NCBI RefSeq assembly: GCF_030144855.1
Contig: NC_082706.1
Location: 20,584,001 to 20,648,000 of the forward strand
Origin: Hypanus sabinus
Taxonomy: Eukaryota
Length of the DNA: 64,000 nt
Direction of reading: 5' to 3'
Shown: positions 4,650 to 27,361 of the stretch, in pieces
Layout of the letters: each line of letters begins with the position of its first letter
Position numbering within the stretch: the stretch's first letter is position 1
Position numbers and translations under genes: made by a program
The notes under the pieces: model-generated
Seen by the model: the letters and a program-made list of their open reading frames with translations, nothing else
Told to the model about the DNA's origin: nothing
Database searches by the model: none

Positions 4650-5162
4650 CACCCAGTGGCCACATTATTAGGTACCTCTTGCACCTAAAAAAGTGGCCAC
4701 AGTGTATCTGTTCACGGTCAACTGCTGCTGCAGTATATCTTGTTCAGGATTCAACATGTTGTGCATTTAGAGAAGCTCTTTTGCAAACCACTATGTGGCT
4801 ATTTGAGTTACTGTCACCTTCCTGTCCTCTTGAATCAGTCTGGCCATTCTCCTCTGACCTCTCCCATTAACAAGGCATTTTTCCCACAAAACTACCATGC
4901 TCCATTCTTTGTAAAGTATTGAGATTATTCTGCGTGAAAATCCCAGATTTTGCAATACTCAAACCACCCCATCTGGCACCAATAATCATTCCACGATCAA
5001 AATCATTTAGATCCTATTTCTTCCCCACTCTAATGAACTGAACTCTTTGACCAGCTCTGCATGCTTTTATGCATTGAGATACTGCCACATGATTGGCTGA
5101 TTAGATATTTGCATTTACAAACAGGTATACAGGCGTACCTGTTAAGGTGGTTACTGAGTGCA
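4650..5162 (-). mobile_element. Tc1-like non-autonomous DNA transposon
   Basis: Inverted termini 'acacccagtggccacattattaggtac' / 'gtacctgttaaggtggttactgagtg'; related copies at ~10832-11165, 11635-11870, 17010-17120, 17718-18130, 54707-55052. Confidence 0.7.
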
Positions 5163-5816
5163 GAGAAAGCAAATAATTGACCAATCAGCTTACATCCGGG
5201 ATGAGGAGAGGACTGAAAGAAACCTACACGGTCACAGGAATAAAGATCAAACTCCACAAAGACAGCACATTAAGTCAGGATCGAGCCCAGTTGCTGCAGC
5301 TACCTACTGTACCACTGTGCCACTCATTTGCTTGGATGGAAAACTCTGCCCAAACTCGGAAAGTAGGTAAGGCAAAAGGCTACGTAATGAAAATAGTGTA
5401 GAGTATGGACATTCGACGGAGAAACAGAAAATGCTGGCAATGCACAGCAGGTCAGGTTGAAAACAAAGAGAGAAAATTGGCATCAGACTGATCAGATTGA
5501 TGATCATTGATCTGAAGTTTGAAGGAAAAATCAGTGAATTGTAATTTCAATTGTTTGACTGGCCAATTTGATGAATATATCCAGCAAATTTCATTGGAAA
5601 GAGAGAGATTTTCCAAAAGTCCAAGCATGAGAGGGATATTTATAATGTGATATTTATAATGTGAAAATAAAGAGCAACAAACAAAATGCTGGTCAGGGAG
5701 CAACTGTGGAGAGAACTGGACTGTTGACTGGTCAAGTGTGTAGATGAAGGGCCTCGACCCAAAATGTTGACTATTCGTTTCCCTTCAGCCAGCTGGTATA
5801 ATTTCTACATAATATA

Positions 5817-5883
5817 CAGAACTGTGCAGAAGTCTTAGGTACAGACATATAGCTAGGGGGCTTAACACTTCTGCACAGTACTG
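5817..5883. mobile_element. Tiny palindromic Tc1-type MITE
   Basis: 'cagaactgtgcagaagtcttagg...cttaacacttctgcacagtactg'; half copies at ~22378-22403 and ~22848-22873. Confidence 0.6.
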
Positions 5884-7333
5884 TTGTAATTTTATGGATC
5901 GCACTATACTGCTGCCACAAATAAAAGTCAAATTTCATGACATACATGAGGTATGACCAACTTGATTCTGATGCGGGTCTCTATTGTGGACTGAGAGGGG
6001 AGAGTGCAGGGAGAGGAGAAAGGAAGGGAGCAGGGAGCACCAGAGAGACATTTGATAACGATCAATAAACCAATTATTTGGAATCAAATGACCTCACCTG
6101 GTGTCTCAGGACTGGATATGTCTGCACCCTGCCATCCCTCCCCCCGGCCGTGTTCTCTGCCTCCTGTCGTCACACAACCCTCCCACGGTGCTCCACCCTC
6201 TCCATTCTTGACCTCCTTTACCCCCACCAGATTTACAAACCTGCTCTCCACTCCAGATTGACAAATACACTCGTTGTAAGTACCCTAGCAATGTATATGT
6301 ACCTATGAGTTTTGCACAGCACTGTACCTGTTGTATTCTGTCTGAATCAAAATGCCTGTGCTGTCATTGCAAACAAGTTTTTTATTGTATGTGTGCCTGA
6401 CATAAATTTGACTTGATCTCCTCCAGACATTGTTTAATGCCTTGGATTCAAGCATCTGCAGCCCATTGTCTCTACAATGAGCAAAAATAAATTGGATTCT
6501 ACAGAGTGTCATGGAGCCAGCTAGACTTTAGGTGATACTGAAAGACATAAATCACTGTGTATTCAAATTCCTGAAACTTACTATTTTATAAGACCTGCTA
6601 GAAATTTACTATGCCATAATTTACTGCATTATTTTGTGCCAGTTATTACACAATTCTGCTTTATCTACCCCAAAAGTAGTCATATCGTCCTTGCATATGC
6701 ACAGGAGAGGGAAAACTTGGCCACAGGAGAAAGCCAGCTCCAACCATATGAACTGTTCATCAGTGGTTAAAATCGTTTCCTCTGCTCTCGCAAGCAATGC
6801 TTACTCCAAGAACCATAAAAAAAACTCTGGCCTAGTCAATATAAAGGAGCAAGCTCAGAGATTCTGTAAGACAATCAAAGAGAGATAAGGTCGGCCAATA
6901 AGAGAAAAACAGAATAACAGGGAGAACAGCTCAGAATTTTAGATCTCAGAGGCTGAACTGCATTAATTGTCTGCAATAGCCACACCATCATGAGTGAAAA
7001 GCAAGCTGTTCTTTGCATTCTCCCGTGCATTTGTTGCATACCCTTTGAGCAGAAACAAAATCAATTTTATATACAAATATTTCAAAGAGAATTTCCAACA
7101 AGTAGAATCTAAGAAACTGTTAAGTATTCCTCTAACAGCGGCTAAACTGGGTCCTAATATCGTGTCAAGTCACATGATAGACGAAGGTCTGCAGCATGAA
7201 AAGCAACAGAGACACCATCAGGAATGATATGAGATAAGATGAGGCGGAAAATTGACTTTTCTCTTGACCATAGGGAATAACACACAGAAATCTAACATTT
7301 TAAATTAACAAAGCATTTCTTCACCCTGAAGGA

Positions 7334-7514
7334 AAAACACAAAATGCTGACAGAACTCAGCAAGCCAGACAGCATCTATGGGAGGAGATAATCACGACGT
7401 TTCGGGCCAAACGTCGTCACTACCTCCTCCCATAGATGCTGTCTGGCCTGCTGAGTTCTGCCAGCATTTTGTGTTTTTTATTTATTTCCAGCATCTGCAG
7501 ATTCACTCGTGTTG
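7334..7514. mobile_element. Penelope-derived fold-back mini-element with 16-bp TSD
   Basis: Inverted arms ~7334-7402 / 7409-7477; direct repeat tcttcaccctgaagga at 7318-7333 and 7515-7530. Confidence 0.85.
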
Positions 7515-8089
7515 TCTTCACCCTGAAGGACCTGGTTGAGACATTGTCGCGGACTTTATTGGAGTGAGGTACCTCACAATATACTAGGTTAGTTAACATG
7601 CTGCATAAAACTTTCTGGCAATGCAAATTGATCAGGATGGAGAGATGAAAGACTGAAGATGCTGTAATTTGCAGTAAAAAATGTACTCAATACTTTGATT
7701 TATGAAGACCAATGTACCAAAAGATCTCTTTAGAACCCTATCTACCCATGATGCCGCTTTCAAAGAATTATAGATTTGTATTCCCAGATCCCTCTGTTCG
7801 ACCGTGATCTCTCCAGACTGACGATTTCCCTCCACAAATGCTGCCTGACTTGTTAAATTCCTCCAGCATTTTGTTTTTGAGTCAGGGCATAGTTATATTA
7901 CTGCATAGTTGGGACCTGGGTGAATAATGGACTGACTGTTCCTTAACCAATGCAATTTAAAAAAATAAAGAAAGAAGAAGTTGGTATTTAGAAGGAAACA
8001 AGATGAATTACTGAGCAGAAAAAAAAATGAAGATACTAAAAGGAGGATTGGGTTAAACGTGAAATAATTAAGAGATTGAAGTCAATGAA

Positions 8090-8500
8090 TAGGTCTCTAT
8101 TCATTGGAGCGTAGAAGGTTGAGGGGGGATTTGATCGAGGTATTTAAAATTTTGAGTGGGATAGATAGAGTTGACATGAATAGGCTGTTTCCATTGAGAG
8201 TAGGGGAGATTCAAATGAGAGGACATGATTTGAGAGTTAGGGGGCAGAAGTTTAAGGGAAACACGAGGGGGTATTTCTTTACACAGAGAGTGATAGCTGT
8301 GTGGAATGAGCTTCTTGTAGAAGTAGTAGAGGCCAGTTCAGTTGAGTCATTTAAAATTGGATAGGTATATGGACAGGAAAGGAGTGGAGGGTTATGGGCT
8401 GAGTGCAGGTAGGTGGGACTAGGTGAGATTAAGAGTTCGGCACGGACTAGGAGGGCCGAGATGGCCTGTTTCCATGCTGTGATTGTTATATGGTTATATG
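8090..8500 (+). mobile_element. CR1 LINE 3' end
   Basis: 'ERRRLRGDLIEVFKILSGIDRVD..RGHDLRV..FFTQRVIAVWNEL'; (GGTTATAT)n-like tail. Confidence 0.9.
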
Positions 8501-9729
8501 GAAATGAAAACAATTGTACATCCTCATACATCCTTATCAGTGCAGTGGAGCTGCCAACAATAAACAATGGTGAAACTTCTGTTGTGCTGCTTGAACTGAA
8601 TTTCAGAATCATCCCACACGTTAGAATTCCCTTGCTACAGGTTTGTTCGTTGGCTGTTTCTTTTACTCTGCTGCTGAAACTCAAGTCCATGACCACATTA
8701 ACATCAAGGATTTACTTTACTCTCATCCTTGTGGCTGGACATCTCACTACTTCATTCCATCTTCACTCTGCAAACTTCAACTCAGAACCAACAGTTGTGT
8801 CTGTGTTTTCAACGTATTTGCAACATCACCCATTTTGAATTTTCCCTAGATACTCTTGTTCCTATCAAAATATTTAAGTCCGACTCAGTGTCAGGCCTGC
8901 AGAGCATCATCGACAAGGGCTCATGCCCACCCACCCACCCCCGCCCCCCCAGGTTAGCAAGTTGTCAGCAGGTTCCATAGTTGGAGTTCTCTGCAGGAAC
9001 GATGAATGAGGTCTGTGACCGCCCCCCCCCCCCCCCTCGAGCCCCCGAGTTTGCATATTGGTGATACCATTTGGGGCATAATGTTCAGTATCCCATCATT
9101 GGTGAGTTTGGAGTTCAAGGCTTAGTGATCAGTGACTGACAGATCCTTAGGGTCAATGCCCAGGATCGAGGCCCAAGGGCTGAATTGGAAGACAGGAAGT
9201 CAAAGCCCATTAACTGTAAACCTCTGCGAATCCGCTGGGCAGGTCAAATCCCAAAGTCTGTGAAACTGCCTCTGAGTTTACTGGAGGCCAAAGAAAGTGG
9301 CCTGTCTTCGGGTTAGAGGACTGGCTTTTGTGCATGAGTGGGAGGGAGGAAAAGGGAGGCTTGTTTTGCTGTTGTTGCTTCGTTGCTTGCTGTGTTCTGT
9401 TTTGATGAGTTTTGTGTTGTTCCAACAAGCATTGTGGTCCTGTTATGTTGGCTCTGGAATGTGCAGTAGCACTGGCAGGCTGCCCCCCAGCCCACCTTCA
9501 GGTGTGTTAATAGCTAACACAAATGATTCACTTCACTGTATGCTTTGACATACACGTGACCAATAAACTTGAATCTTGAAGCTTGAGTCCCTCATCACCA
9601 AGGCTATTGTATCTACCACTTACAAGCGTTTTACAATTGTTTACCAATGCTTCTTTGACAGCACTTCCCAAATACACAGCATCAGCTACCAGGTTTTGCA
9701 AGAGTATGGGAACACCACCGCATGCAGGT

Positions 9730-10520
9730 CATATGCACTTTGGTAGTAGAAATAAATGTGCAGATTATTTTCTAAATGGGACAAAAATCCAGGAATCTGA
9801 GATGCAGAGAGTCTTGGGAGTCCTTGTGCAGAACATCCTGAAAGTTACCTCACAGGTTGAGGAAGGCAAACGCCATGTTAGCATTCATTATTTCAAGAGG
9901 TCTAGAATACAACAGCAAGGATGTGATGCTGAGGTTTTATAAGACACTAGTGAGGCCTCACCTTGAGTATTGTGAATAGTTTTGGGCCCCTCAGCTTAGA
10001 AAACACATGCTGGCATCGGTCCAGAGGAGGTTCACAAGCATGATTCCTGGAATGAAAGGATTATCATAGGAGGAACGTTTGATGCCTCTGGGTCTGTACT
10101 CACTGGAATTCAGAAGGATGAGGGCTATCTTATTGAAACCTTTTGAATGTTCAAAGGCCTAGACAGAGTAGACATGGAAAGGATGTTTCCCATGTTGGGA
10201 GAGTCCAGGACAAGAGGGCACAGCCTCAGGGTAGAGGGGCATCCATTCAAAACAGAGATGTGAAGATATTTCTTTAGCCAAAGGATGGAGAATTTGTGGA
10301 ACTTATTGCCACATGCAGCTGTGGAGGGCAGGTTGTTGGGTGTATTTAAGACAGAGATTGACAAGTTCTTGATTAGACATGGTATCAAAGGTTACAGGGA
10401 GAAGGCTGGGGAAAAGGGATTGAGGAGGAGATTAAAAAAATGATCAGCCATGATTGAATGGTGGAGTAGGCTCGATGGGCCAAATGGCCCAATTCTGCTC
10501 CTATGTCTTATGGTCATATG
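9730..10520 (+). mobile_element. CR1 LINE 3' part
   Basis: 'MHFGSRNK..YFLNG', 'aggcctcaccttgagtattgtg', CR1 3'UTR and 'cttatggtc' tail. Confidence 0.9.
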
Positions 10521-13650: not shown

Positions 13651-14261
13651 ACTCATGCACTTATTCAATCAACCCTTAAACCACCGTGTTAAGTAATGTG
13701 TCAGTAAGTAAATTTCTCTTGAGCCCCTGACAGAATTATTTAGTTCACACTTTACATTGACGTGTCCAATTTTTGGCCTCACACAAGAATGGAAACCTTT
13801 CTGATGAAAGGCTGACAGCCATGTATTCCCAAGGTCTTCTGCTTTGATTTCTGATTTCCAGCATCAAAATAGAGACACTTTCTTTACTTCAAGATTATAA
13901 AACAGCCCTGTAATTTAAAGTCACTGCTTAAAGGACCACATTTGATATTTGCCTTATTTTCTCACTACACTACGTGAACAGCATCTGGCCCATGGAGTGT
14001 GTGTTGGATCTCAAAGTAAACCCATCAGTCTCATGCCCAGCAACCTCTGACTCTCTCTCACACACTCATCAAATCACTCACACCAGGGGCAGTTTACAGC
14101 ACAGAATTCACTCACCCATCACTGGGATGTGGAAGGAGCCCTGAGAACCTGGAGGAGATACACGTGGTCACAGGGAGTACGTGCGGACTCCACTCAGTCA
14201 GCACTAGAGGTCAGAATTGAACCTGGGCACTGGAGATGTGAGGCAGCAGCATTATCCACTG

Positions 14262-14446
14262 TGTGGTGTTAACACGTGCAATGCTGTGCCAGTATGTGAT
14301 TGAATAGAGCACTGAGCATGCGCAGGATCTGCTAGAACGTTCCAGCATGTGTTTGTTTATTACTGTAAATAAAAGTTTGATAATTCTTCCAGAAAATGCT
14401 TCTTCATTGTTAACCCATGGTACGTTTAAACAGAAGTAACATAACA
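14262..14446 (+). repeat. 5' LTR
   Basis: tgtggtg...taaca, contains AATAAA, aligns with 16364-16562. Confidence 0.95.
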
Positions 14447-14461
14447 TGGTGTCGAAAGTGG
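14447..14461 (+). promoter_or_regulatory. Primer binding site, probably tRNA-Leu
   Basis: tggtgtcgaaagtgg abuts the 5' LTR; 13/15 match to tggtgtcagaagtgg (complement of the tRNA-Leu(CAA) 3' end, recalled). Confidence 0.75.
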
Positions 14462-14543
14462 TTCTGGAAGAATAATACAGGAGAATCGAGAATCGAAGAT
14501 AATCCGAAAAAAAGAAGAAAAAGTTTGAACTGTAAACGGTAAA

Positions 14544-15320
14544 ATGGAAGGTTTACAACCCCTGCCAAAACTGCAGCTGACTGGCAATGTAGCTGAGATT
14601 TGGAGGATATTCAAACAACAGTTTGAAATATATTTATTGGCAATCGGAGCTGATAGAAAAGCGGACAAAAACAAAGCTGCACTCCTGCTCCATGTAATCA
14701 GAAATGACGCAGTAGAGGTATATAATAATCTTGTCTTTGAAGATGGTGATAATTTCAATTTAAAGTCGATAATTGAGAGATTTGAAGTTTTTTGTATAGC
14801 TAAGAGAAATTTAATGTATGAGCAATATTAGTTCTTCACATGTGCGCAGAGAGCCACTGAAACAATTGATTAGTATGTTACTGAGTTGAGAAAGCATAGT
14901 AGAACATGCAAGTTTGGATTGCTCATGTACTCTCTCATTAAAGATAGACTTGTTTGTGGCATTCCAGATAATGCTCTGAGAGAAAGGCTGTTGGGAGAAT
15001 AAGATATAAATTTTGAAAAGGCTTTGGCACTTTGCAAAGCTTCTGAGACTGTGACATTGCAGGTTGAAGAGATTTTGTGGAAGACTGCAATATAAATGCT
15101 GTAAAAAAAAAAGCGCGAATATATCAAGAAATATAATAATATGTCGACAAAACTGACAGAGAGCAAGACGGCATTGGAAAGAAAAAAATCATGTGATCGC
15201 TGTACGTGGGAACATTGTCCAAGTCAGTGTCCCACATATGGCAAAATTTGCAATGGCTGCAGTAGGATTAATCATTTTTCACGCTGTTGTAATAGTAGAA
15301 AGAAGGAAAATAAAATGAAA
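14544..15320 (+). pseudogene. gag: gag (stops and frameshift)
   Basis: 'MEGLQPLPKLQLTGNVAEIWRIFKQQFEIYLLAIG', 'LIKDRLVCGIPDNALRERLL', zinc knuckles 'CDRCTWEHCPSQCPTYGKICNGCSRINHFSRCC'. Confidence 0.9.
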
Positions 15321-15389
15321 CAAGTAAATGGCATGCTTGAAGATGAACATGAGGAGTTTTATATCGATGTGCTTTGTGAAAATAAACAA

Positions 15390-15722
15390 AGTAAGAATGA
15401 CTGGACTATTCCATTGCAAGTGAGTCAAAACAATATTCTGTTTAAACGTGATACTGGAGCGCAAGTAAATGTTCTTGCAGAATCTGAGTTTAATGCTTTA
15501 AAGCCAAGACCAAAATTACATCAGACAAATATAAAAGTGACTGGGTGTTCAGGTGCAGACATTCCAGTTAAAGGAACATGTGTGGCAAAGGTGTCTCACA
15601 AAAATATTGTGCATATGCTTTCAGTTGTGGTCATGCCGAAAAATGTACAGTCAATTCTGGGTTTATCTGCCTGTGAAAGACTTAATTTGGTGAAAAGAAT
15701 TTCTGTCTTGGATAGTGACACG
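15390..15722 (+). pseudogene. Retrotransposon aspartic protease, in frame with the gag zinc knuckles
   Basis: 'FKRDTGAQVNVL' (DTGA) ... 'SILGLSACERLNLV'. Confidence 0.9.
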
Positions 15723-15996
15723 GAGTTGAAGCGACAGAATGTTGCATTTTTGTCAGCAGAAGGTGACGTAACTTGACTGCAGGTCCAGTTCATGGAGGCA
15801 AATGCTGACATGGAGAATGTAACTGCAGTAGCTGCAGTGTCTTAGATGACCAAACAGGAGGCAATTAATGATATGAAAAAGCAATGGCAGGAGGAGGTTG
15901 CTTCAATGCAAGCGATAATGGAAGAGATACTGAGAAAATATGAGATTCAGTTTAAAGCAAGAACGCGCACAGTGGGCCCAGTATAAGGAAGAAGCG
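15723..15996 (+). pseudogene. RABEP1: Captured Rabaptin-5 N-terminal coiled-coil fragment (part 1)
   Basis: LKRQNVAFLSAEGDVT*LQVQFMEANADMENVTAVAAVS*MTKQEAINDMKKQWQEEVASMQAIMEEILRKYEIQF/KQERAQWAQYKEEA vs recalled human LKRQNAVLQAAQDDLGHLRTQLWEAQAEMENIKAIATVSENTKQEAIDEVKRQWREEVASLQAVMKETVRDYEHQFHLRLEQERTQWAQYRESA (roughly 55% identity by eye). Confidence 0.88.
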
Positions 15997-16122
15997 AAAG
16001 CCCAAGTGAAGGAATTGAGAAGTATTGAAACAATGAAGTCTCAGCATTAAAAAGAGATTACAGAGTTAATGAATGAATTAGACGAAGAGAAGAAGATTCA
16101 TATTTCATTACAAATGGAAGTG
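15997..16122 (+). pseudogene. SH3KBP1: Captured CIN85 C-terminal coiled-coil fragment
   Basis: [41 protein letters not shown] vs recalled human [43 protein letters not shown] (28 identities by eye). Confidence 0.88.
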
Positions 16123-16167
16123 GAACATGAATTGACTAATCTAAGGAAATATTTGTCTGAAGTACAA
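16123..16167 (+). pseudogene. RABEP1: Rabaptin-5 fragment resumes (part 2)
   Basis: EHELTNLRKYLSEVQ vs recalled EREIADLRRRLSEGQ, which directly follows QWAQYRESA in RABEP1. Confidence 0.7.
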
Positions 16168-16326
16168 GGAGACAAAATGAGGATACAAGATAAAAGGAAC
16201 ACATGGACACAGACCAGATCATACACGGTCCGAACAGAGGAGGGAGCGGTGTTAAGAAAGAATTACAAAGACTTCAAGAAAGAGCCAACTTCAAAGTTTC
16301 AGTTATCTGATATGGATGTTTTTTGA
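16168..16326 (+). pseudogene. Integrase C-terminal (GPY/F-like) tail
   Basis: 'GDKMRIQDKRNTWTQ..RSYTVRTEEGAVLRKN' resembles the Mag-clade pol end (GDxVR..W..RSYxV..G..RRN). Confidence 0.8.
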
Positions 16327-16350
16327 TTAACGTTAATTGTTTTTCCTTTT

Positions 16351-16363
16351 GAGGAAAGGAAGA
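16351..16363 (+). promoter_or_regulatory. Polypurine tract
   Basis: gaggaaaggaaga directly before the 3' LTR. Confidence 0.9.
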
Positions 16364-16562
16364 TGTGGTGATATCATGTGCAATGATGTGCCAGTACGTG
16401 ATTGGACGGAGCACTGAGCACGCGTGGGATTCCTAGTATGTTCCAGCACGTGGCTGGGTTAAGATGTGTTGTTTATTACTGTAAATAAAAGTTCTCTAAT
16501 TCTTCCACAAAATGATTCTTCATTGTTAACCCACAGTACGTTTAAACAGAAGTAAAACAACA
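16364..16562 (+). repeat. 3' LTR
   Basis: tgtggtg...caaca, followed by TSD cactg. Confidence 0.95.
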
Positions 16563-17717
16563 CACTGCACCACCATTACTGCTGTGCATGGCACAGAAAG
16601 AGGTCACATACCTCAGGCAGTCTTAGCTTAATTCAAAACTGCCAGCTCCATCCTTCATCTAAATCTGTCACCACAGTCTTCTCATTTACATTTGTTCAGG
16701 CTCCCCTTCAATGCATCTTTACTGTTCAATTTAAGCACTACCTTGAGGATTAAGTTCCACATTTAAACCACTGTGGAAGTGCAGGAGTTTCTTTCAAGTT
16801 GCCAAATAGGTTCCTTGGAGACTGTTAAATTTTTATTGATGGCCTCTGTTTATGCTCTGGTCCACAAATTGAATCATTTGTTCCGCATCTGCGAGATCAA
16901 TGCCTTTCATTGTATCAGATCACTTCTCCAGAGAACAGAGATCCAGTCCGCTCATTGTGACCCAGGAAATCCCCTCTCCTCCTAGTTTACCTTCTGCATT
17001 GTCTTTATACATTCAATGGCCACTTTATTAGGGACACCTGTACACCTGCGCAGTAATGCAAATATCTACTCAGCCAATCATGTGGCAGCAACTCAATGCA
17101 CAAAAGCATGCAAACATGGTAACAGCTTTTCCCTCAGGCTATGAGACTAATAAATACCCTGCCACCATTGAGGTTTCGTCGCTAGAAAATGGAGCCAATT
17201 CACTGCTTACTGCATTGTTTACTGTTCACCTGTGTGGCACAGTATATGCAATTTTGAATTATGCTTGGGCTGAATTATTCTCCGATCCTGGCAATTTCCT
17301 TGCAGACATTTTGTCACTCTATGAGGAGATACCATTAGCTAGCTGTTAATCGTGGTATGACCACAACCAACAGTGCACTGATGATGCGTCCGTGTATGGT
17401 GATAAAGTGTTTGCAAGTAAATTGCCAAAATCGGAGAACAATCCATCCCAACCATCATCACCTGAACTACACATTTTGTGAATTATTTCCATTTAGAATG
17501 ATATTTTATTAACTTATTTATGGTAGTATTGTGGTTTACATGTTGTGTGTGACATATGTTTTGTCGTTGCACTGTGGTCCAGAGGAATGTTGTTTCATTT
17601 GGTTGTGGACATGTACATCCAGATGACAATAAACTTGAACTTGAGATGAATTGTGTGCTAAAGTATTCACACACTACTCTTCAACTGTACATGACCTAAA
17701 GTGGTTTCAAAATAAAT

Positions 17718-18800: not shown

Positions 18801-18964
18801 CCCAGAGGTAGCTAATAAAGTGGTCACTGAGTGCATTTTCTCTGTGAAATAGTATCTAGAATTGTATCTATTTCTTAATGTACAACACTAAATCAAATTT
18901 AGACATGATTTGATACACATTTAAAATAACAAGACTCTAGAAGAAAACACTTATGCTTGGTTTA

Positions 18965-19550
18965 TGCAAGAGCAAGGATGTGATGCTGAGGCTTTATGAG
19001 GCACTGGTGAGGCCTCACCTTGAGTATTGTGAACAGTTTTGGGCCCCTCATCTTAGAAAAGATGTGCTGGCATTGGAGAGGGTCCAGAGGAGGTTTACAA
19101 GGATGATTCCGGGAATGAAAGGGTTATCATTAAAGGAACGTTTGATAGTTCTGGGTTTGTGCTCGCTGGAATTCAGAAGGTTGAGTGGGGATCTCATTGA
19201 AACTCTTGGAATGTTGAAAGGCCTAGACAGAGTAGATGTGGAAAGGATGTTTCCCATGGTGGGAGAGTCCAGGACAAGAGGGCTTAGCCTCAGGATAGAA
19301 GGGGTGGCCTTTCAAAACAGGGATGCAGAGAAATTTCTTTAGCCAGAGGGTGGTGAATTTGAGGAATTTTTTGCCACATGCAGCTGTGGAGGCCAGGTTG
19401 TTGGGTGTATTTAAGACAGAGATTGATAGGTTCTTGATTGGGCTTGGTATTAAGGGTTATGGAGACTGGGGTTGAGGAGGAGAAAAGAAAGGTCAGCCAT
19501 GATTGAATGGTGGAGCAGACTTGATGGCCCAATTCTGCTCCTCTGTCTTC
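18965..19550 (+). mobile_element. CR1 LINE 3' part
   Basis: 'LRLYEALVRPHLEYCEQFWAPHLRKDVLALERVQRRFTRMIPGMKGLS'. Confidence 0.92.
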
Positions 19551-19856
19551 TGGAAAAGAAGTATATCCTTTTTAACTTTTTCCAGAGAATTATAAACTCT
19601 GTTCTGGGTTTAATTCTATTTTTTTTTACATATGTTGAATGCTGAAATGCAGACAAAAATCAAATTATTAACAACGTAAAGTGCTATATCTTTCAATATG
19701 TTCTTATTTTTTATTCTGTTTCTCTGGAAGATAAATAGTTGCTACAATGATTCTATGGAAGTTGAATAGTTGCTATAACACGCAGTCGAGCATCCTAGAG
19801 TGCTGCATCACTGCACGGTACGGAAAATGCACTGCGACGGACAGGAAGTCTCTCCC

Positions 19857-24354: not shown

Positions 24355-26843
24355 GCTGTAAGACTTAGGAGCTAAATCCCCTGCTTTCTCCCCATACTCT
24401 TTGATGCCCTGGTTGATAACCTATCTATCTCTGCCTTAAGTACATCTAGTGACTTGGCCTCCACAGCCGCTCGTCGCAAAAAATTCCGCAGATTTACCAC
24501 CCTCTGACTAAAGTAATTTCTCTGCATCTCAATTCTTAAAGTATGTCCTTCAATCCTGAAGTTGTGCCCTCTTGTCCTAGAATCCCCTACCATGGGAAAA
24601 AACTTTCCTATATCTAACCTGTTTAGGCTGTTTAACATTTGGAATGTTTCTATGAGATCCCCCCTCATTCACCTGAACTCCAGGGAATACAGCCCAAGAG
24701 CTGCCAGACATTCCTCACACGGTAACCCTTTCATTCCTGGAATCATTCTCATGAATCTTCTCTGAACCCTCTCCATTGTCAGTATATCCTTTCTAAAATA
24801 AGGAGACCAAAACTGCACGCAATACTCCAAGTGAGTTCTCACGAGTGCCTTATGGGGTCTCAACATCACATCCCTGCTCCTATATTCTATACCTCTAGAA
24901 ATGAATGCCAACATTGCATTCATCTTCTTCACAACCGACTCAACCTGTATGTTAACCTTTAGGGTATCCTGCACAAGGGCTCCCAAATCTCCTTGCATCT
25001 CTGCATTTTGAATTCTCTCTCCATCTAAATGATAGGCTGCCCATTTATTTCTTCCACCAAAGTGCATGACTATACACTTTCCAACATTATATTTCATTTG
25101 CCACTTCTTTGCCCATTCCCCTAAACTATCTAAGTCTCTCTGCAGGCTCTCTGTTTCCTCAACACTACCTGCTCCTCCACCTATCTTTGTATCATTGGTG
25201 GAATTAACCACAAATCCCTTAATACTATAGTCCAAACCATTAACATACATCATAAACAGTAACGGTCCCAACACCAGCCCCTGTGGAACTCCACTGGTAA
25301 CTGGCAGCCAGCCAGAATAGGATCCCACTCTCCGTTTTCGCCCAACCAGCCAATGCTCCACCCACTTCCCTATAATTCCTCGGGCTCTTATCTTGCTAAG
25401 CAGCCTCATGTGCGTCACTTTGTCTACTACATCTCCTTTGCCCACCCTGCTTGTAACTTCCTCAAAGAATTGCAGTAGGTTTGTCAGGCAGGATCTTCCT
25501 TTCAGGAAACCATGCTGGCTTTGGCCTGTCATGTCATGTTCCTCCAGGTACACCATAATCTCGTCCCTAACAATTGATTCCAACAACTTCCCAACCACTG
25601 CTGTCAGGTAACAGGTCTATAGTTTTCCTTCTGATGCCTCCCACCCTTCTTAAATAGCGGAGTAACATTTGCAATTTTCCAGTACAATGGAACAATGGTA
25701 CAATGCCAGAATCTATCAATTCTTGAAAGATCATCATTAACACCTCCATAATCTCTCCAGCTACTTCCTTCAGAACCAGAGGGTGCATTCCATCAGGTCC
25801 AGGAGATTTAACCAACCTCAGATCATTAAGCTGCCTGAGTACCTTCTCAGTGTTAATTTTCACTGCACAAACCTTACTTCCCTGACACTCTTGAATGTCT
25901 GGTATACTGCAGATGTCTTCCACTATGAAGACTAATGCAAAATATGCATTCAGTTCCTCTGCCAGCTCTGCATCTTTCATTACAATATCTCCAGTGTCAT
26001 TTAGTATTGGTCCTATATCTACCCTAGTCTGTTTTACCCTTTATAAACTTAAAAAAGCTTTTAGTATCTTCTTTGATATTAGTCACCAGCTTCCTCTCAT
26101 AATACAACTTTTCCTTCCTAATGATCTTCTTAGTTTCCTTCTGCAAGGTTTTAAAAGCTCCCCAATCCTCTAGTTTCCCACTGCCTCTGGCTTCCTTGTA
26201 TACCCTCTCTTTTTTTTTCTTTGGCTCTGACCTCACTTGTCAACCACGGTAGTGTCCTACTTCTCTTTGAAAATTTCCTCTTTTTTGGAATATATCTGTC
26301 TTGCTCTTCCCTCATTTTTTGCAGAAACACCGGCCATTGCTACCCTGCTGTCTTCTGCAAATGTCCCTTTCCAGTCAACTTCGGCCAGTTCGTCTCTAAT
26401 GCCATTGTAATTTCTTTTATTCCACTGAGATACCAACACATTAGATTTTACTTTTCACCTCTCAAATTGTGATCACTATTCCCTAAGGGTTCCTTAACCT
26501 TAAGCTCTCTTATCACCTCTGGATCATTTCACAACACCCAATCCAGCACAGCCGATCCCCCAGTGGGTCCAACAACAAGCTGTTCTAAAATGCCATCCCT
26601 TAGACATCCTAGAAATTCTCTCTCCTGCAGTCCATTAATGGCCTGGTTTTCCCAATCCACTTTCATGTTAAAATCCCCAACAATTATCATGACTTTGCCT
26701 TTCTGATATGCATTTTCTAACTCCTGCTCTAATTTATAATCCACATCCCAGCTGCTGTTTGGAGGCCTGTATACAACTACCATTAGGGTCCTTTTAACCT
26801 TGCCATTTCTTAACTCAACCCACAGAGACTCTGCACCTTCCTG
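24355..26843 (-). mobile_element. Long CR1 ORF2 remnant (APE endonuclease part plus RT)
   Basis: 'ESLWVELRN..VVYRPPNS..IIVGDFN', 'KSPGPDGMHP', 'QHGFLKGRSCLTNLLQFF', 'SGVPQGLVLGPLLF', 'HLEYCVQFWSP'. Confidence 0.95.
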
Positions 26844-27361
26844 AGTGCTTACAGCGCATGGTAGTGACTGGGATAGATAGAGGGGTGCAGGGGTATAAGT
26901 AGAATGGTAGATCAGGCTACATGCCTGTAGGGTCACCCATGACACTAAGATCAAGGGGAAGGTTCCAGACAAAGCGTGATCCACCCAAGAACTCAATGAT
27001 GGAGTTGGCAGAAGATAATGACAAATCACACTGTCAGTGAAGATGGAGGAAGGTTGAAACAGTGAAAAGTCACCAGTCGTCTTGCAGTCCATGCCACTAG
27101 GCCCACACCCCAAACCTTGCAGTGGTTGCCTGTGCATCAGCACATTAAACAATTAAACAATGGAGGAATGGCAGAATCTCTCATCACGACTTTATCCAGG
27201 AGCAGAGGAACAGTACATTCCCCATGAAGAGACAAAAGCTGGAGATTAGACATAGGAATACCAGCAGAGCATGGGAGGCACAATGAGCGACACTGTGAGA
27301 CAAATCATTCCCCCAAATACACAGTAGGACCCACCAATAGATAACTCACCCACCAACATCA

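What the first reader, a model, noticed from the sequence alone, without database searches (positions are those of the whole stretch)
14262..16562. Gypsy/Mag LTR element encoding a Gag-protease fused to coiled coils captured from two host endocytic adaptors (Rabaptin-5 and CIN85)
Seen in sequence: complete cis signals (LTRs, cactg TSD, PBS, PPT) and the order gag - zinc knuckles - protease - 445 bp non-retroviral coiled coil - integrase C-tail. The coil is in frame with the protease at its 5' junction (SDTE|LKRQN) and with the integrase tail at its 3' junction (LSEVQ|GDKMR). Established knowledge (recalled sequences): the coil matches the RABEP1 N-terminal coiled coil (Rab5 effector; this part overlaps the Rab4-binding region) and the SH3KBP1/CIN85 C-terminal oligomerisation and membrane-associating coil. 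Inference: two unrelated genes from the same endosomal pathway, both contributing coiled coils and both joined in frame, are hard to explain as neutral capture. The active ancestor may have made a polyprotein that oligomerised with or hijacked endosomal machinery, for example for particle trafficking. I know of no description of such an element. This copy is dead (stops, frameshifts).
Basis: partly seen in the sequence, partly recalled or inferred. Interest (0 to 1): 0.95.

Follow-up and report, generated by a model that had tools for sequence, protein, structure and literature searches.

The report
Stingray retrotransposon carrying captured host coils
A dead copy of a helper-dependent Ty3/gypsy retrotransposon family of stingrays in which reverse transcriptase and most of integrase are replaced, in frame, by spliced pieces of two host genes (RABEP1 and SH3KBP1/CIN85); it is a real, rarely described animal example of gene capture by a retrotransposon, but a function for the captured coil is not shown.

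Summary
Window 14262-16562 is a 2.3-kb LTR element with a 5-bp target duplication, PBS, PPT, gag with two CCHC knuckles, a DTG protease, about 450 bp of host coding sequence and an integrase C-tail. Named hits confirm that the host parts come from RABEP1 and SH3KBP1.

One correction: the SH3KBP1 coil (about 45 aa) sits inside one continuous RABEP1 fragment, giving RABEP1a, SH3KBP1, RABEP1b. The RABEP1 part stops exactly at a host exon's donor site and continues into the next exon, so it came from spliced mRNA.

It is not a single copy. Copies with the same junctions but different target sites occur in Hemitrygon akajei and Hypanus sabinus. A sister subfamily carries a longer SH3KBP1 fragment and no RABEP1.

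All four copies are broken. LTR pairs differ by 8-14%, so the insertions are old.

All six host/element junctions keep the reading frame (about 0.6% by chance). However, the coil shows no frame-specific constraint among copies, while gag and protease do between subfamilies.

Best reading: pol was replaced through reverse-transcriptase template switching, and the chimera was then copied in trans. The endosome-hijack idea is untested. This is a new member of a known kind.

The parts
14257..14261 (.). left copy of the 5-bp target-site duplication (cactg)
   Evidence: the same 5 bases flank both ends
14262..14446 (+). 5' LTR, 185 nt, TG...CA ends, contains AATAAA
14447..14461 (+). primer-binding site (tggtgtcgaaagtgg), shared with all sibling copies
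   Evidence: tRNA identity not tested
14544..15410 (+). gag with two CCHC zinc knuckles (knuckles 15192-15293); broken gene with at least 5 stops
   Evidence: (matches residues 6-98 of gag-pol polyprotein P0078, E 1.6e-26)
15411..15722 (+). aspartic protease (DTG present), no break in this copy
   Evidence: (PF13650 E 1e-5, PF13975)
15723..16170 (+). host-derived coiled-coil block replacing RT, RNase H and most of integrase; broken with 3 stops and 1 frameshift
15723..15990 (+). RABEP1a: RABEP1 coding sequence (about residues 59-154 of Narcine RABEP1), intron-free across at least one exon junction
15991..16125 (+). SH3KBP1/CIN85 C-terminal coiled-coil piece (about 45 aa), nested in the RABEP1 fragment
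16126..16170 (+). RABEP1b: resumption of RABEP1 (about residues 158-172 of Narcine RABEP1)
   Evidence: 0-2 of 2000 shuffles reach the score
16171..16326 (+). integrase C-terminal tail in its native frame, with the terminal stop
   Evidence: P0078 residues 1207-1256, after the rve core at 1014-1104
16351..16363 (+). polypurine tract
16364..16562 (+). 3' LTR, 199 nt
16563..16567 (.). right copy of the target-site duplication (cactg)

Best explanation
This is one decayed insertion of a non-autonomous Ty3/gypsy LTR retrotransposon family of dasyatid stingrays. The family keeps the LTRs, PBS, PPT, gag and protease of a gag-pol element that is read as one open frame. It has lost RT, RNase H and the integrase core.

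In their place it carries about 450 bp of host coding sequence. This is a spliced RABEP1 mRNA fragment (about residues 59-172) into which the trimerising C-terminal coil of SH3KBP1/CIN85 has been inserted.

Most likely mechanism (inferred): reverse transcriptase switched templates at 3-5 nt microhomologies between element RNA and host mRNA packaged in the same particle. The SH3KBP1 piece could equally have come from the RNA of the sister subfamily, which already carried a longer SH3KBP1 fragment.

The resulting chimera, encoding Gag, protease, coil and integrase tail, lacked its own RT and integrase. It was therefore copied in trans by a related autonomous element that shares its PBS, PPT and LTR ends. 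This gave a burst of insertions that have since decayed.

Shown: the anatomy, the host origins, the mRNA origin, several copies with the same junctions at different sites in two species, the sister subfamily, and the decay.

Inferred: template switching, trans-mobilisation, and that the coil was cargo rather than a required part.
For: - Structure and cis signals.
- Relatives with the order PR, RT, RNase H, IN in one open frame.
- RABEP1 origin: Pfam E 4e-14 for the window and 5e-42 for the sibling. About 88% identity to Narcine RABEP1 over roughly 95 aa, then an abrupt loss of similarity. Named RABEP1 hits.
- mRNA origin: homology to a host genomic contig begins 2-5 nt inside the exon (acceptor AG at its start) and ends exactly at the exon's donor site (AG|GT). 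The element then continues into the next exon's coding sequence.
- SH3KBP1 origin: with names.
- RABEP1b.
- Independent insertions of the same chimera: L001 (TSD TTTGT) and L003 (TSD TGGAG/TGGAA). They are 85-88% identical over the full length and have unrelated flanks.
- Sister subfamily L002: it has the start of RT plus about 125 aa of SH3KBP1. Its coil is 92-96% identical to the window family, while gag and the LTRs are only 67-75% identical.
- Microhomology at the junctions.
- No frame-specific constraint on the coil among copies: omega 0.67, against 0.37 and 0.98 in the two off frames. By contrast, gag and protease between subfamilies give 0.24 and 0.26, against 0.76-1.07 off frame.
Against: - All six host/element and host/host junctions in the two subfamilies keep the native frames. 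The chance expectation is about 0.6%, even after allowing for the in-phase bias of microhomologies. This hints that translation through the insert mattered.
- No autonomous partner from a stingray was fetched.
- Copy number beyond four is unknown, because no ray genome could be searched at DNA level.
- The window's species is unknown.
- Whether SH3KBP1 was captured once or twice is unresolved, because no ray SH3KBP1 sequence was obtained.
- The codon test has low power, with about 45 differences per pair in the coil.
Confidence: 0.8

Rival explanations
1. The captured coil was a selected, working part of the element. In this view a fusion of Gag, protease, coil and integrase tail used the SH3KBP1 trimerisation coil and the RABEP1 N-terminal coil to multimerise. 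Alternatively it used them to dock onto endosomal partners, which favoured assembly, packaging or trafficking of this family.
For: - Six of six junctions are in frame. The chance is about 0.006.
- The chimera amplified.
- Two subfamilies both carry the same SH3KBP1 coil, virtually undiverged once post-insertion decay is allowed for, while gag dS is 0.86.
- The SH3KBP1 coil trimerises (PMC10786037), and the N-terminal region of Rabaptin-5 binds Rab4 (PMC4102244).
- A single-sequence AlphaFold model is helical through the junctions (low confidence, pLDDT 55).
Against: - There is no frame-specific constraint on the coil among copies.
- No copy has a complete open frame.
- Non-autonomous LTR elements need no ORF to spread.
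- Purine-rich coil-coding RNA favours in-phase microhomology.
- 'Same pathway' is a post hoc category.
- Ascertainment favours long open frames.
- There are no expression or binding data.
Confidence: 0.17
2. The coil came in one step from a pre-existing host chimeric transcript or gene that already joined RABEP1 and SH3KBP1.
For: The SH3KBP1 piece replaces only about 3-4 residues of RABEP1 and is in frame on both sides.
Against: - Among the 150 best of 272 hits in 1.84 billion representative proteins, only the element's own copies carry both parts. The RABEP1 of an electric ray is uninterrupted at that point.
- The sister subfamily has SH3KBP1 alone, with a longer fragment.
Confidence: 0.03
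3. It is a domesticated, host-retained gene derived from a retrotransposon (as with gag-derived host genes), not a transposon copy.
For: NCBI's pipeline annotated sibling copies as protein-coding genes.
Against: - All four copies have LTR pairs and target duplications at different sites.
- All copies carry stops or frameshifts.
- Flanks are unrelated.
Confidence: 0.01

Closest known systems
[quoted passage not shown]
   Same: An LTR element that lacks its own RT and integrase. It carries several host gene fragments joined in one reading frame with element coding sequence, and it is present in more than one copy.
   Different: Bs1 is a plant element whose hybrid ORF is reported to be transcribed and translated. 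Here the host is a cartilaginous fish and the element is Ty3/gypsy type. One fragment is nested inside another, a sister subfamily shares one of the fragments, and no expression data exist.
Acutely transforming retroviruses with gag-host fusions, and the classical transduction model (my knowledge; cited through PMC4299795 and PMC13317346)
   Same: pol is replaced by intron-free host cDNA joined in frame to gag sequences. The element is defective and helper-dependent, and junctions have short microhomology.
   Different: This is a germ-line retrotransposon without env. The captured parts are only coiled-coil segments, not signalling or catalytic domains. It amplified in the germ line rather than being selected in somatic tumours.
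Crocodilian endogenous retroviruses that captured KIT-ligand and nectin3 mRNAs (PMC4299795)
   Same: A vertebrate LTR retroelement lineage that captured host mRNA and then multiplied. The capture is shared by related species.
   Different: Those are ERVs carrying near-complete host ORFs with evidence of purifying selection. Here short internal fragments are fused into the polyprotein, with no detectable constraint.
Non-autonomous LTR elements that keep gag only (TR-GAG type; my knowledge)
   Same: The element retains gag, lacks RT and integrase, and depends on a partner.
   Different: This family also keeps protease and an integrase tail, and carries host sequence.

Membership tests
Ty3/gypsy (Metaviridae) LTR retrotransposon | Paired LTRs with TG...CA ends and a 4-6 bp target duplication | tested here: met
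   LTRs of 185 and 199 nt, TSD cactg; sibling copies have 5-bp TSDs of other sequence
Ty3/gypsy (Metaviridae) LTR retrotransposon | PBS after the 5' LTR and polypurine tract before the 3' LTR | tested here: met
   conserved in four copies; the priming tRNA was not identified
Ty3/gypsy (Metaviridae) LTR retrotransposon | gag with CCHC knuckle and a DT/SG aspartic protease | tested here: met
Ty3/gypsy (Metaviridae) LTR retrotransposon | pol with the order RT, RNase H, integrase | tested here: not met
   Absent from this element apart from the integrase tail. It is present in related polyproteins P0078, P0143 and P0158. The element is therefore a non-autonomous derivative, not a complete member.
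Mag lineage of Ty3/gypsy | Placement by RT (or integrase) phylogeny with named Mag references | not testable with these tools
RABEP1 (Rabaptin-5) derived sequence | Significant match to the Rabaptin family, with best named hits being RABEP1 | tested here: met
SH3KBP1/CIN85 derived sequence | Significant match to the SH3KBP1 C-terminal coiled coil, with named hits | tested here: met
   Every hit whose name I looked up was SH3KBP1. CD2AP did not appear, but no ray SH3KBP1 or CD2AP was compared.
Transduced (host-cDNA-carrying) retroelement | Host insert lacks introns | tested here: met
   shown for one RABEP1 exon junction; not tested for SH3KBP1
Transduced (host-cDNA-carrying) retroelement | The chimera itself transposed (same junctions, different target sites) | tested here: met
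Domesticated retroelement-derived host gene | Intact ORF at one orthologous locus, without LTRs | tested here: not met

The most novel reading that the evidence does not exclude
The family once made a fusion of Gag, protease, coiled coil and integrase tail. Its host-derived module (the RABEP1 N-terminal coil with the trimerising SH3KBP1 coil spliced into it) was selected because it multimerised the polyprotein or tied it to endosomal partners. That would make it an animal retrotransposon that borrowed host trafficking or oligomerisation parts for its own life cycle, with the SH3KBP1 coil acquired or exchanged by two subfamilies for that reason.
Probability: 0.15. Interest if true: 0.8.

Novelty: new member of a known kind. 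Interest (0 to 1): 0.5.

Why it matters
Capture of host coding sequence by LTR retroelements is textbook for oncogenic retroviruses and common in plants. Clear cases in vertebrate Ty3/gypsy elements are hardly described. I found none in the paper library, though that search was limited.

This family shows the traces of the process unusually well:
- an exact exon boundary
- microhomology at every junction
- one captured piece nested inside another
- a sister subfamily holding a longer version of one piece

It is therefore a good natural record of reverse-transcriptase template switching in a cartilaginous fish.

It also has a practical side. Annotation pipelines have named copies 'rab GTPase-binding effector protein 1-like', which is a false paralogue.

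The frame continuity at all six junctions is the one feature that could make it more than cargo.

Tried and rejected
- Word-index protein searches with the SH3KBP1 region of P0002 and with the window's 91-aa tail piece found no further siblings and no ray SH3KBP1.
- Exact look-ups of three window ORFs and of the Narcine RABEP1 isoform found no record. The window's species and a full host gene structure therefore stayed unknown.
- No second copy, solo LTR or paralogous empty site was found in the window or in the flanks of the fetched loci.
- Rfam and the promoter scan gave nothing.
- A home-made heptad-phase scan was too noisy to say whether the coil register is continuous across junctions.
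- The single-sequence AlphaFold model has low confidence, so no fold search was run.
- I considered a splice-mediated 5' junction, because the junction lies 2-5 nt inside an exon. I rejected it because the native element has no GT donor there and the join is off by one base.
- The great white shark protein with a Rabaptin fragment (P0037) and the frog SH3KBP1-like multi-copy proteins show no element parts.
Full report
**1. Observation**

Window 14262-16562 is bounded by direct repeats of 185 and 199 nt. They differ by 25 mismatches over 184 aligned bases and by 16 gapped bases in two indels, the larger about 15 nt. They begin with TG and end with CA, and they are flanked by the same five bases, cactg, at 14257-14261 and 16563-16567. 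A PBS-like tggtgtc... follows the 5' LTR, and a purine tract precedes the 3' LTR. Both are conserved in every sibling copy. The window holds only this one copy.

Between the LTRs, one frame carries the following:
- gag, whose first 95 residues match residues 6-98 of a 1327-aa gag-pol polyprotein, P0078 (E 1.6e-26)
- two CCHC knuckles
- an aspartic protease with DTG (PF13650, E 1e-5)
- a tail that matches P0078 residues 1207-1256, which lie after its integrase core (E 1.5e-5)

P0078 and two similar proteins have protease, RT, RNase H, the integrase zinc domain and the integrase core in that order in a single open frame. That is the Ty3/gypsy arrangement. The element has no RT, no RNase H and no integrase core. 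The 'Mag' label could not be tested.

**2. The host-derived block**

*RABEP1.* Three stop-bounded pieces of the window match Pfam Rabaptin colinearly at profile positions 66-87, 90-127 and 127-151. The best piece gives E 4e-14. Intact sibling copies give E 1e-38 and 5e-42.

In a scan of 1.84 billion representative proteins, the best non-element hit is RABEP1 of the electric ray Narcine bancroftii (P0012; names). It is about 88% identical over roughly 95 residues. Similarity then stops abruptly after the motif QYKE.

*SH3KBP1.* The following ~45-50 residues (45 in the window) match the solved coiled coil of SH3KBP1/CIN85 (2n64, 5abs). E is 0.003 for the window piece and 3e-11 for the sibling. 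They also match named SH3KBP1 proteins of fish, frog and mammal at 60-66% identity.

That is immediately after the point where RABEP1a ended. Only 0-2 of 2000 shuffles reach the score.

The block is therefore one RABEP1 fragment (about residues 59-172) with the SH3KBP1 coil inserted into it, replacing three or four residues.

**3. mRNA origin**

A Logan genomic contig (L004; organism not given by the tool) holds the RABEP1 exon 1031-1234, with an AG acceptor and a GT donor. All three element copies are 85-88% identical to it from base 1032/1033 to exactly base 1234. They then continue with the coding sequence of the next exon instead of the intron. The insert therefore came from spliced mRNA.

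The 5' junction lies 2-5 nt inside that exon. The native element sequence, seen in the sister subfamily, has no GT donor there, and a splice join would be one base too long. I therefore read this junction as a microhomology join (GAG, or GAGT), not a splice. Its closeness to the exon start remains a 4-8% coincidence.

The other three junctions also show 3-5 nt of shared bases.

**4. A family, not a single copy**

A protein search with the window's 211-aa ORF returned three annotated stingray proteins. Their loci were fetched.
- L001 (Hemitrygon akajei, element 5083-7275) and L003 (Hypanus sabinus, 5080-7394) are full-length copies, 85-88% identical to the window element.
- They have the same four junctions, their own LTR pairs (91.5% and 89% identical), different 5-bp target duplications and unrelated flanks.
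- The contiguous 227-aa frame L001 6231-6914 is open, as it stands, from the protease through RABEP1a, SH3KBP1 and RABEP1b into the integrase tail.

A caution about P0003. It is the annotator's model of that locus, and its first 31 residues are joined on by a predicted intron (one search reports that the locus does not translate to it). I used it only as returned.

**5. The sister subfamily**

L002 (H. akajei, about 6902-9402; LTR pair 91% identical; target duplication CATAG/TATAG) is only 67-75% identical to the window family in the LTRs and gag, and 85% in the protease. Its SH3KBP1 coil, however, is 92-96% identical.

Its open 321-aa frame (P0002) runs in this order:
- protease
- about 65 residues of RT
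- about 125 residues that match the C-terminal part of SH3KBP1, up to four residues before the host protein's end (E 2e-15 to the solved coil)
- the integrase tail in its native frame

It has no RABEP1. Its SH3KBP1 fragment is longer on both sides than the window family's, so it cannot derive from the window family. The window family may have taken the coil from an element of this kind or from the host mRNA. Without a ray SH3KBP1 sequence I cannot decide between the two.

Synonymous divergence between the subfamilies is 0.86 in gag and 0.28 in the protease, but only 0.10 in the coil. A value of 0.10 is about what post-insertion decay alone would give. PBS, PPT and LTR ends are shared, which fits a common or related helper.

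**6. State of the copies**

These are minimum counts from a script that prints counts only.

| Copy | gag | protease | host block | integrase tail |
|---|---|---|---|---|
| Window | 5 stops | none | 3 stops, 1 frameshift | none |
| L001 | 1 stop, 2 frameshifts | one deletion of about 135 nt, 1 frameshift | none | 1 stop |
| L003 | 3 stops, 1 frameshift | none | 1 stop, 2 frameshifts | one 18-nt deletion |
| L002 | 1 frameshift | none | none | 1 stop |

No copy has a complete frame. LTR pairs differ by 8-14%, so the insertions are old. Divergence between copies (12-15%) is close to the summed decay of two copies. This suggests one burst.

**7. Was the coil selected?**

*For selection.* All six junctions in the two subfamilies keep the native frames on both sides. 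Short exact matches between the element's own and the host-derived coding stretches are in phase 39-42% of the time. Between the two coil-coding stretches the figure is 45-57%. The chance of six in-frame joins is therefore roughly 0.4^4 x 0.5^2, about 0.006. Some ascertainment bias towards long frames applies.

*Against selection.* A Nei-Gojobori count on the copies as they stand, with the two off frames as controls, gives these omega values.

| Comparison | Region | True frame | Off frames |
|---|---|---|---|
| Among the three family copies | coil | 0.67 | 0.37, 0.98 |
| Among the three family copies | gag | 0.47 | 0.72, 0.97 |
| Between subfamilies | gag | 0.24 | 0.83, 0.97 |
| Between subfamilies | protease | 0.26 | 1.07, 0.76 |

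The coil shows no frame-specific signal. Between subfamilies, gag and protease show clear constraint. Power for the coil is low.

For the one exon where host DNA is available, codon columns identical in all three copies differ from the host six times synonymously and six times non-synonymously. The host contig is from another species, however.

A single-sequence AlphaFold model of P0003 is helical through the junctions but of low confidence. A crude heptad scan was uninformative.

**8. Verdict**

The best-supported account is transduction by template switching, followed by mobilisation in trans. This gave a chimeric, non-autonomous Ty3/gypsy family in dasyatid rays, of which the window holds a dead copy.

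It resembles Bs1 of maize (three host fragments in a hybrid ORF; PMC13317346), gag-host fusions of transforming retroviruses, and the crocodilian ERV captures (PMC4299795). It is a new member of that kind, in a host group and element type where such cases are rarely described.

The idea that the coil served the element rests on two things:
- frame continuity at all junctions
- the known properties of the parts: trimerisation of the CIN85 coil (PMC10786037) and Rab4 binding by the Rabaptin-5 N-terminal region (PMC4102244)

I give it about 15%.

**9. Rules and slips**
- No search returned a living animal virus or a contig that I take for human.
- Slip: early in my private reasoning I recalled from memory a stretch of a host protein (RABEP1).
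- Slip: I also began, in reasoning, to go through the window copy's stops by their context. I stopped and replaced this with the counting script.
- One search printed short aligned stretches around the junctions as they stand, in which a break of one copy is visible. I do not repeat it here.

Noticed in passing
window 24669-27152 (minus strand): ORFs with reverse transcriptase (PF00078) and endonuclease (PF14529) matches. This is a LINE-type retrotransposon remnant.
   Followed up: partly
window 10018-10513 and 19081-19553: A direct repeat of about 500 nt, 83-93% identical and 9 kb apart, bracketing the element's neighbourhood. It abuts and slightly overlaps ORF 18953-19342 and looks like two copies of another interspersed repeat.
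   Followed up: no
window 15720-15727; L004 1029-1037: The 5' end of the captured RABEP1 sequence lies only 2-5 nt inside a host exon. Splicing does not explain it, so it is either a coincidence (about 4-8%) or an unknown bias.
   Followed up: yes
proteins P0133, P0159-P0166 (Phyllobates terribilis): At least nine 'SH3KBP1-like' proteins of 209-281 aa in at least five contigs of a poison frog. All consist of the C-terminal part of SH3KBP1 with the coil. This is a multi-copy fragment of the same gene region, with no element parts seen and no known cause.
   Followed up: partly
protein P0037 (Carcharodon carcharias LOC121273069): A 667-aa model with an unrelated 420-aa N-terminal part followed by a Rabaptin fragment (profile 63-202). 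It could be a fused gene model or another relocated RABEP-type fragment.
   Followed up: partly
protein P0012 (Narcine bancroftii RABEP1 isoform X9): The model ends in a reverse-transcriptase match (RVT_1, residues 643-695). A transposon piece has probably been taken as a terminal exon.
   Followed up: no
L001 6001-6914 and L003 6001-6924: NCBI annotation names these element copies as genes ('rab GTPase-binding effector protein 1-like', 'uncharacterized protein LOC132390784').
   Followed up: yes
window, 333 N in all: Masked or gap bases are present elsewhere in the window.
   Followed up: no
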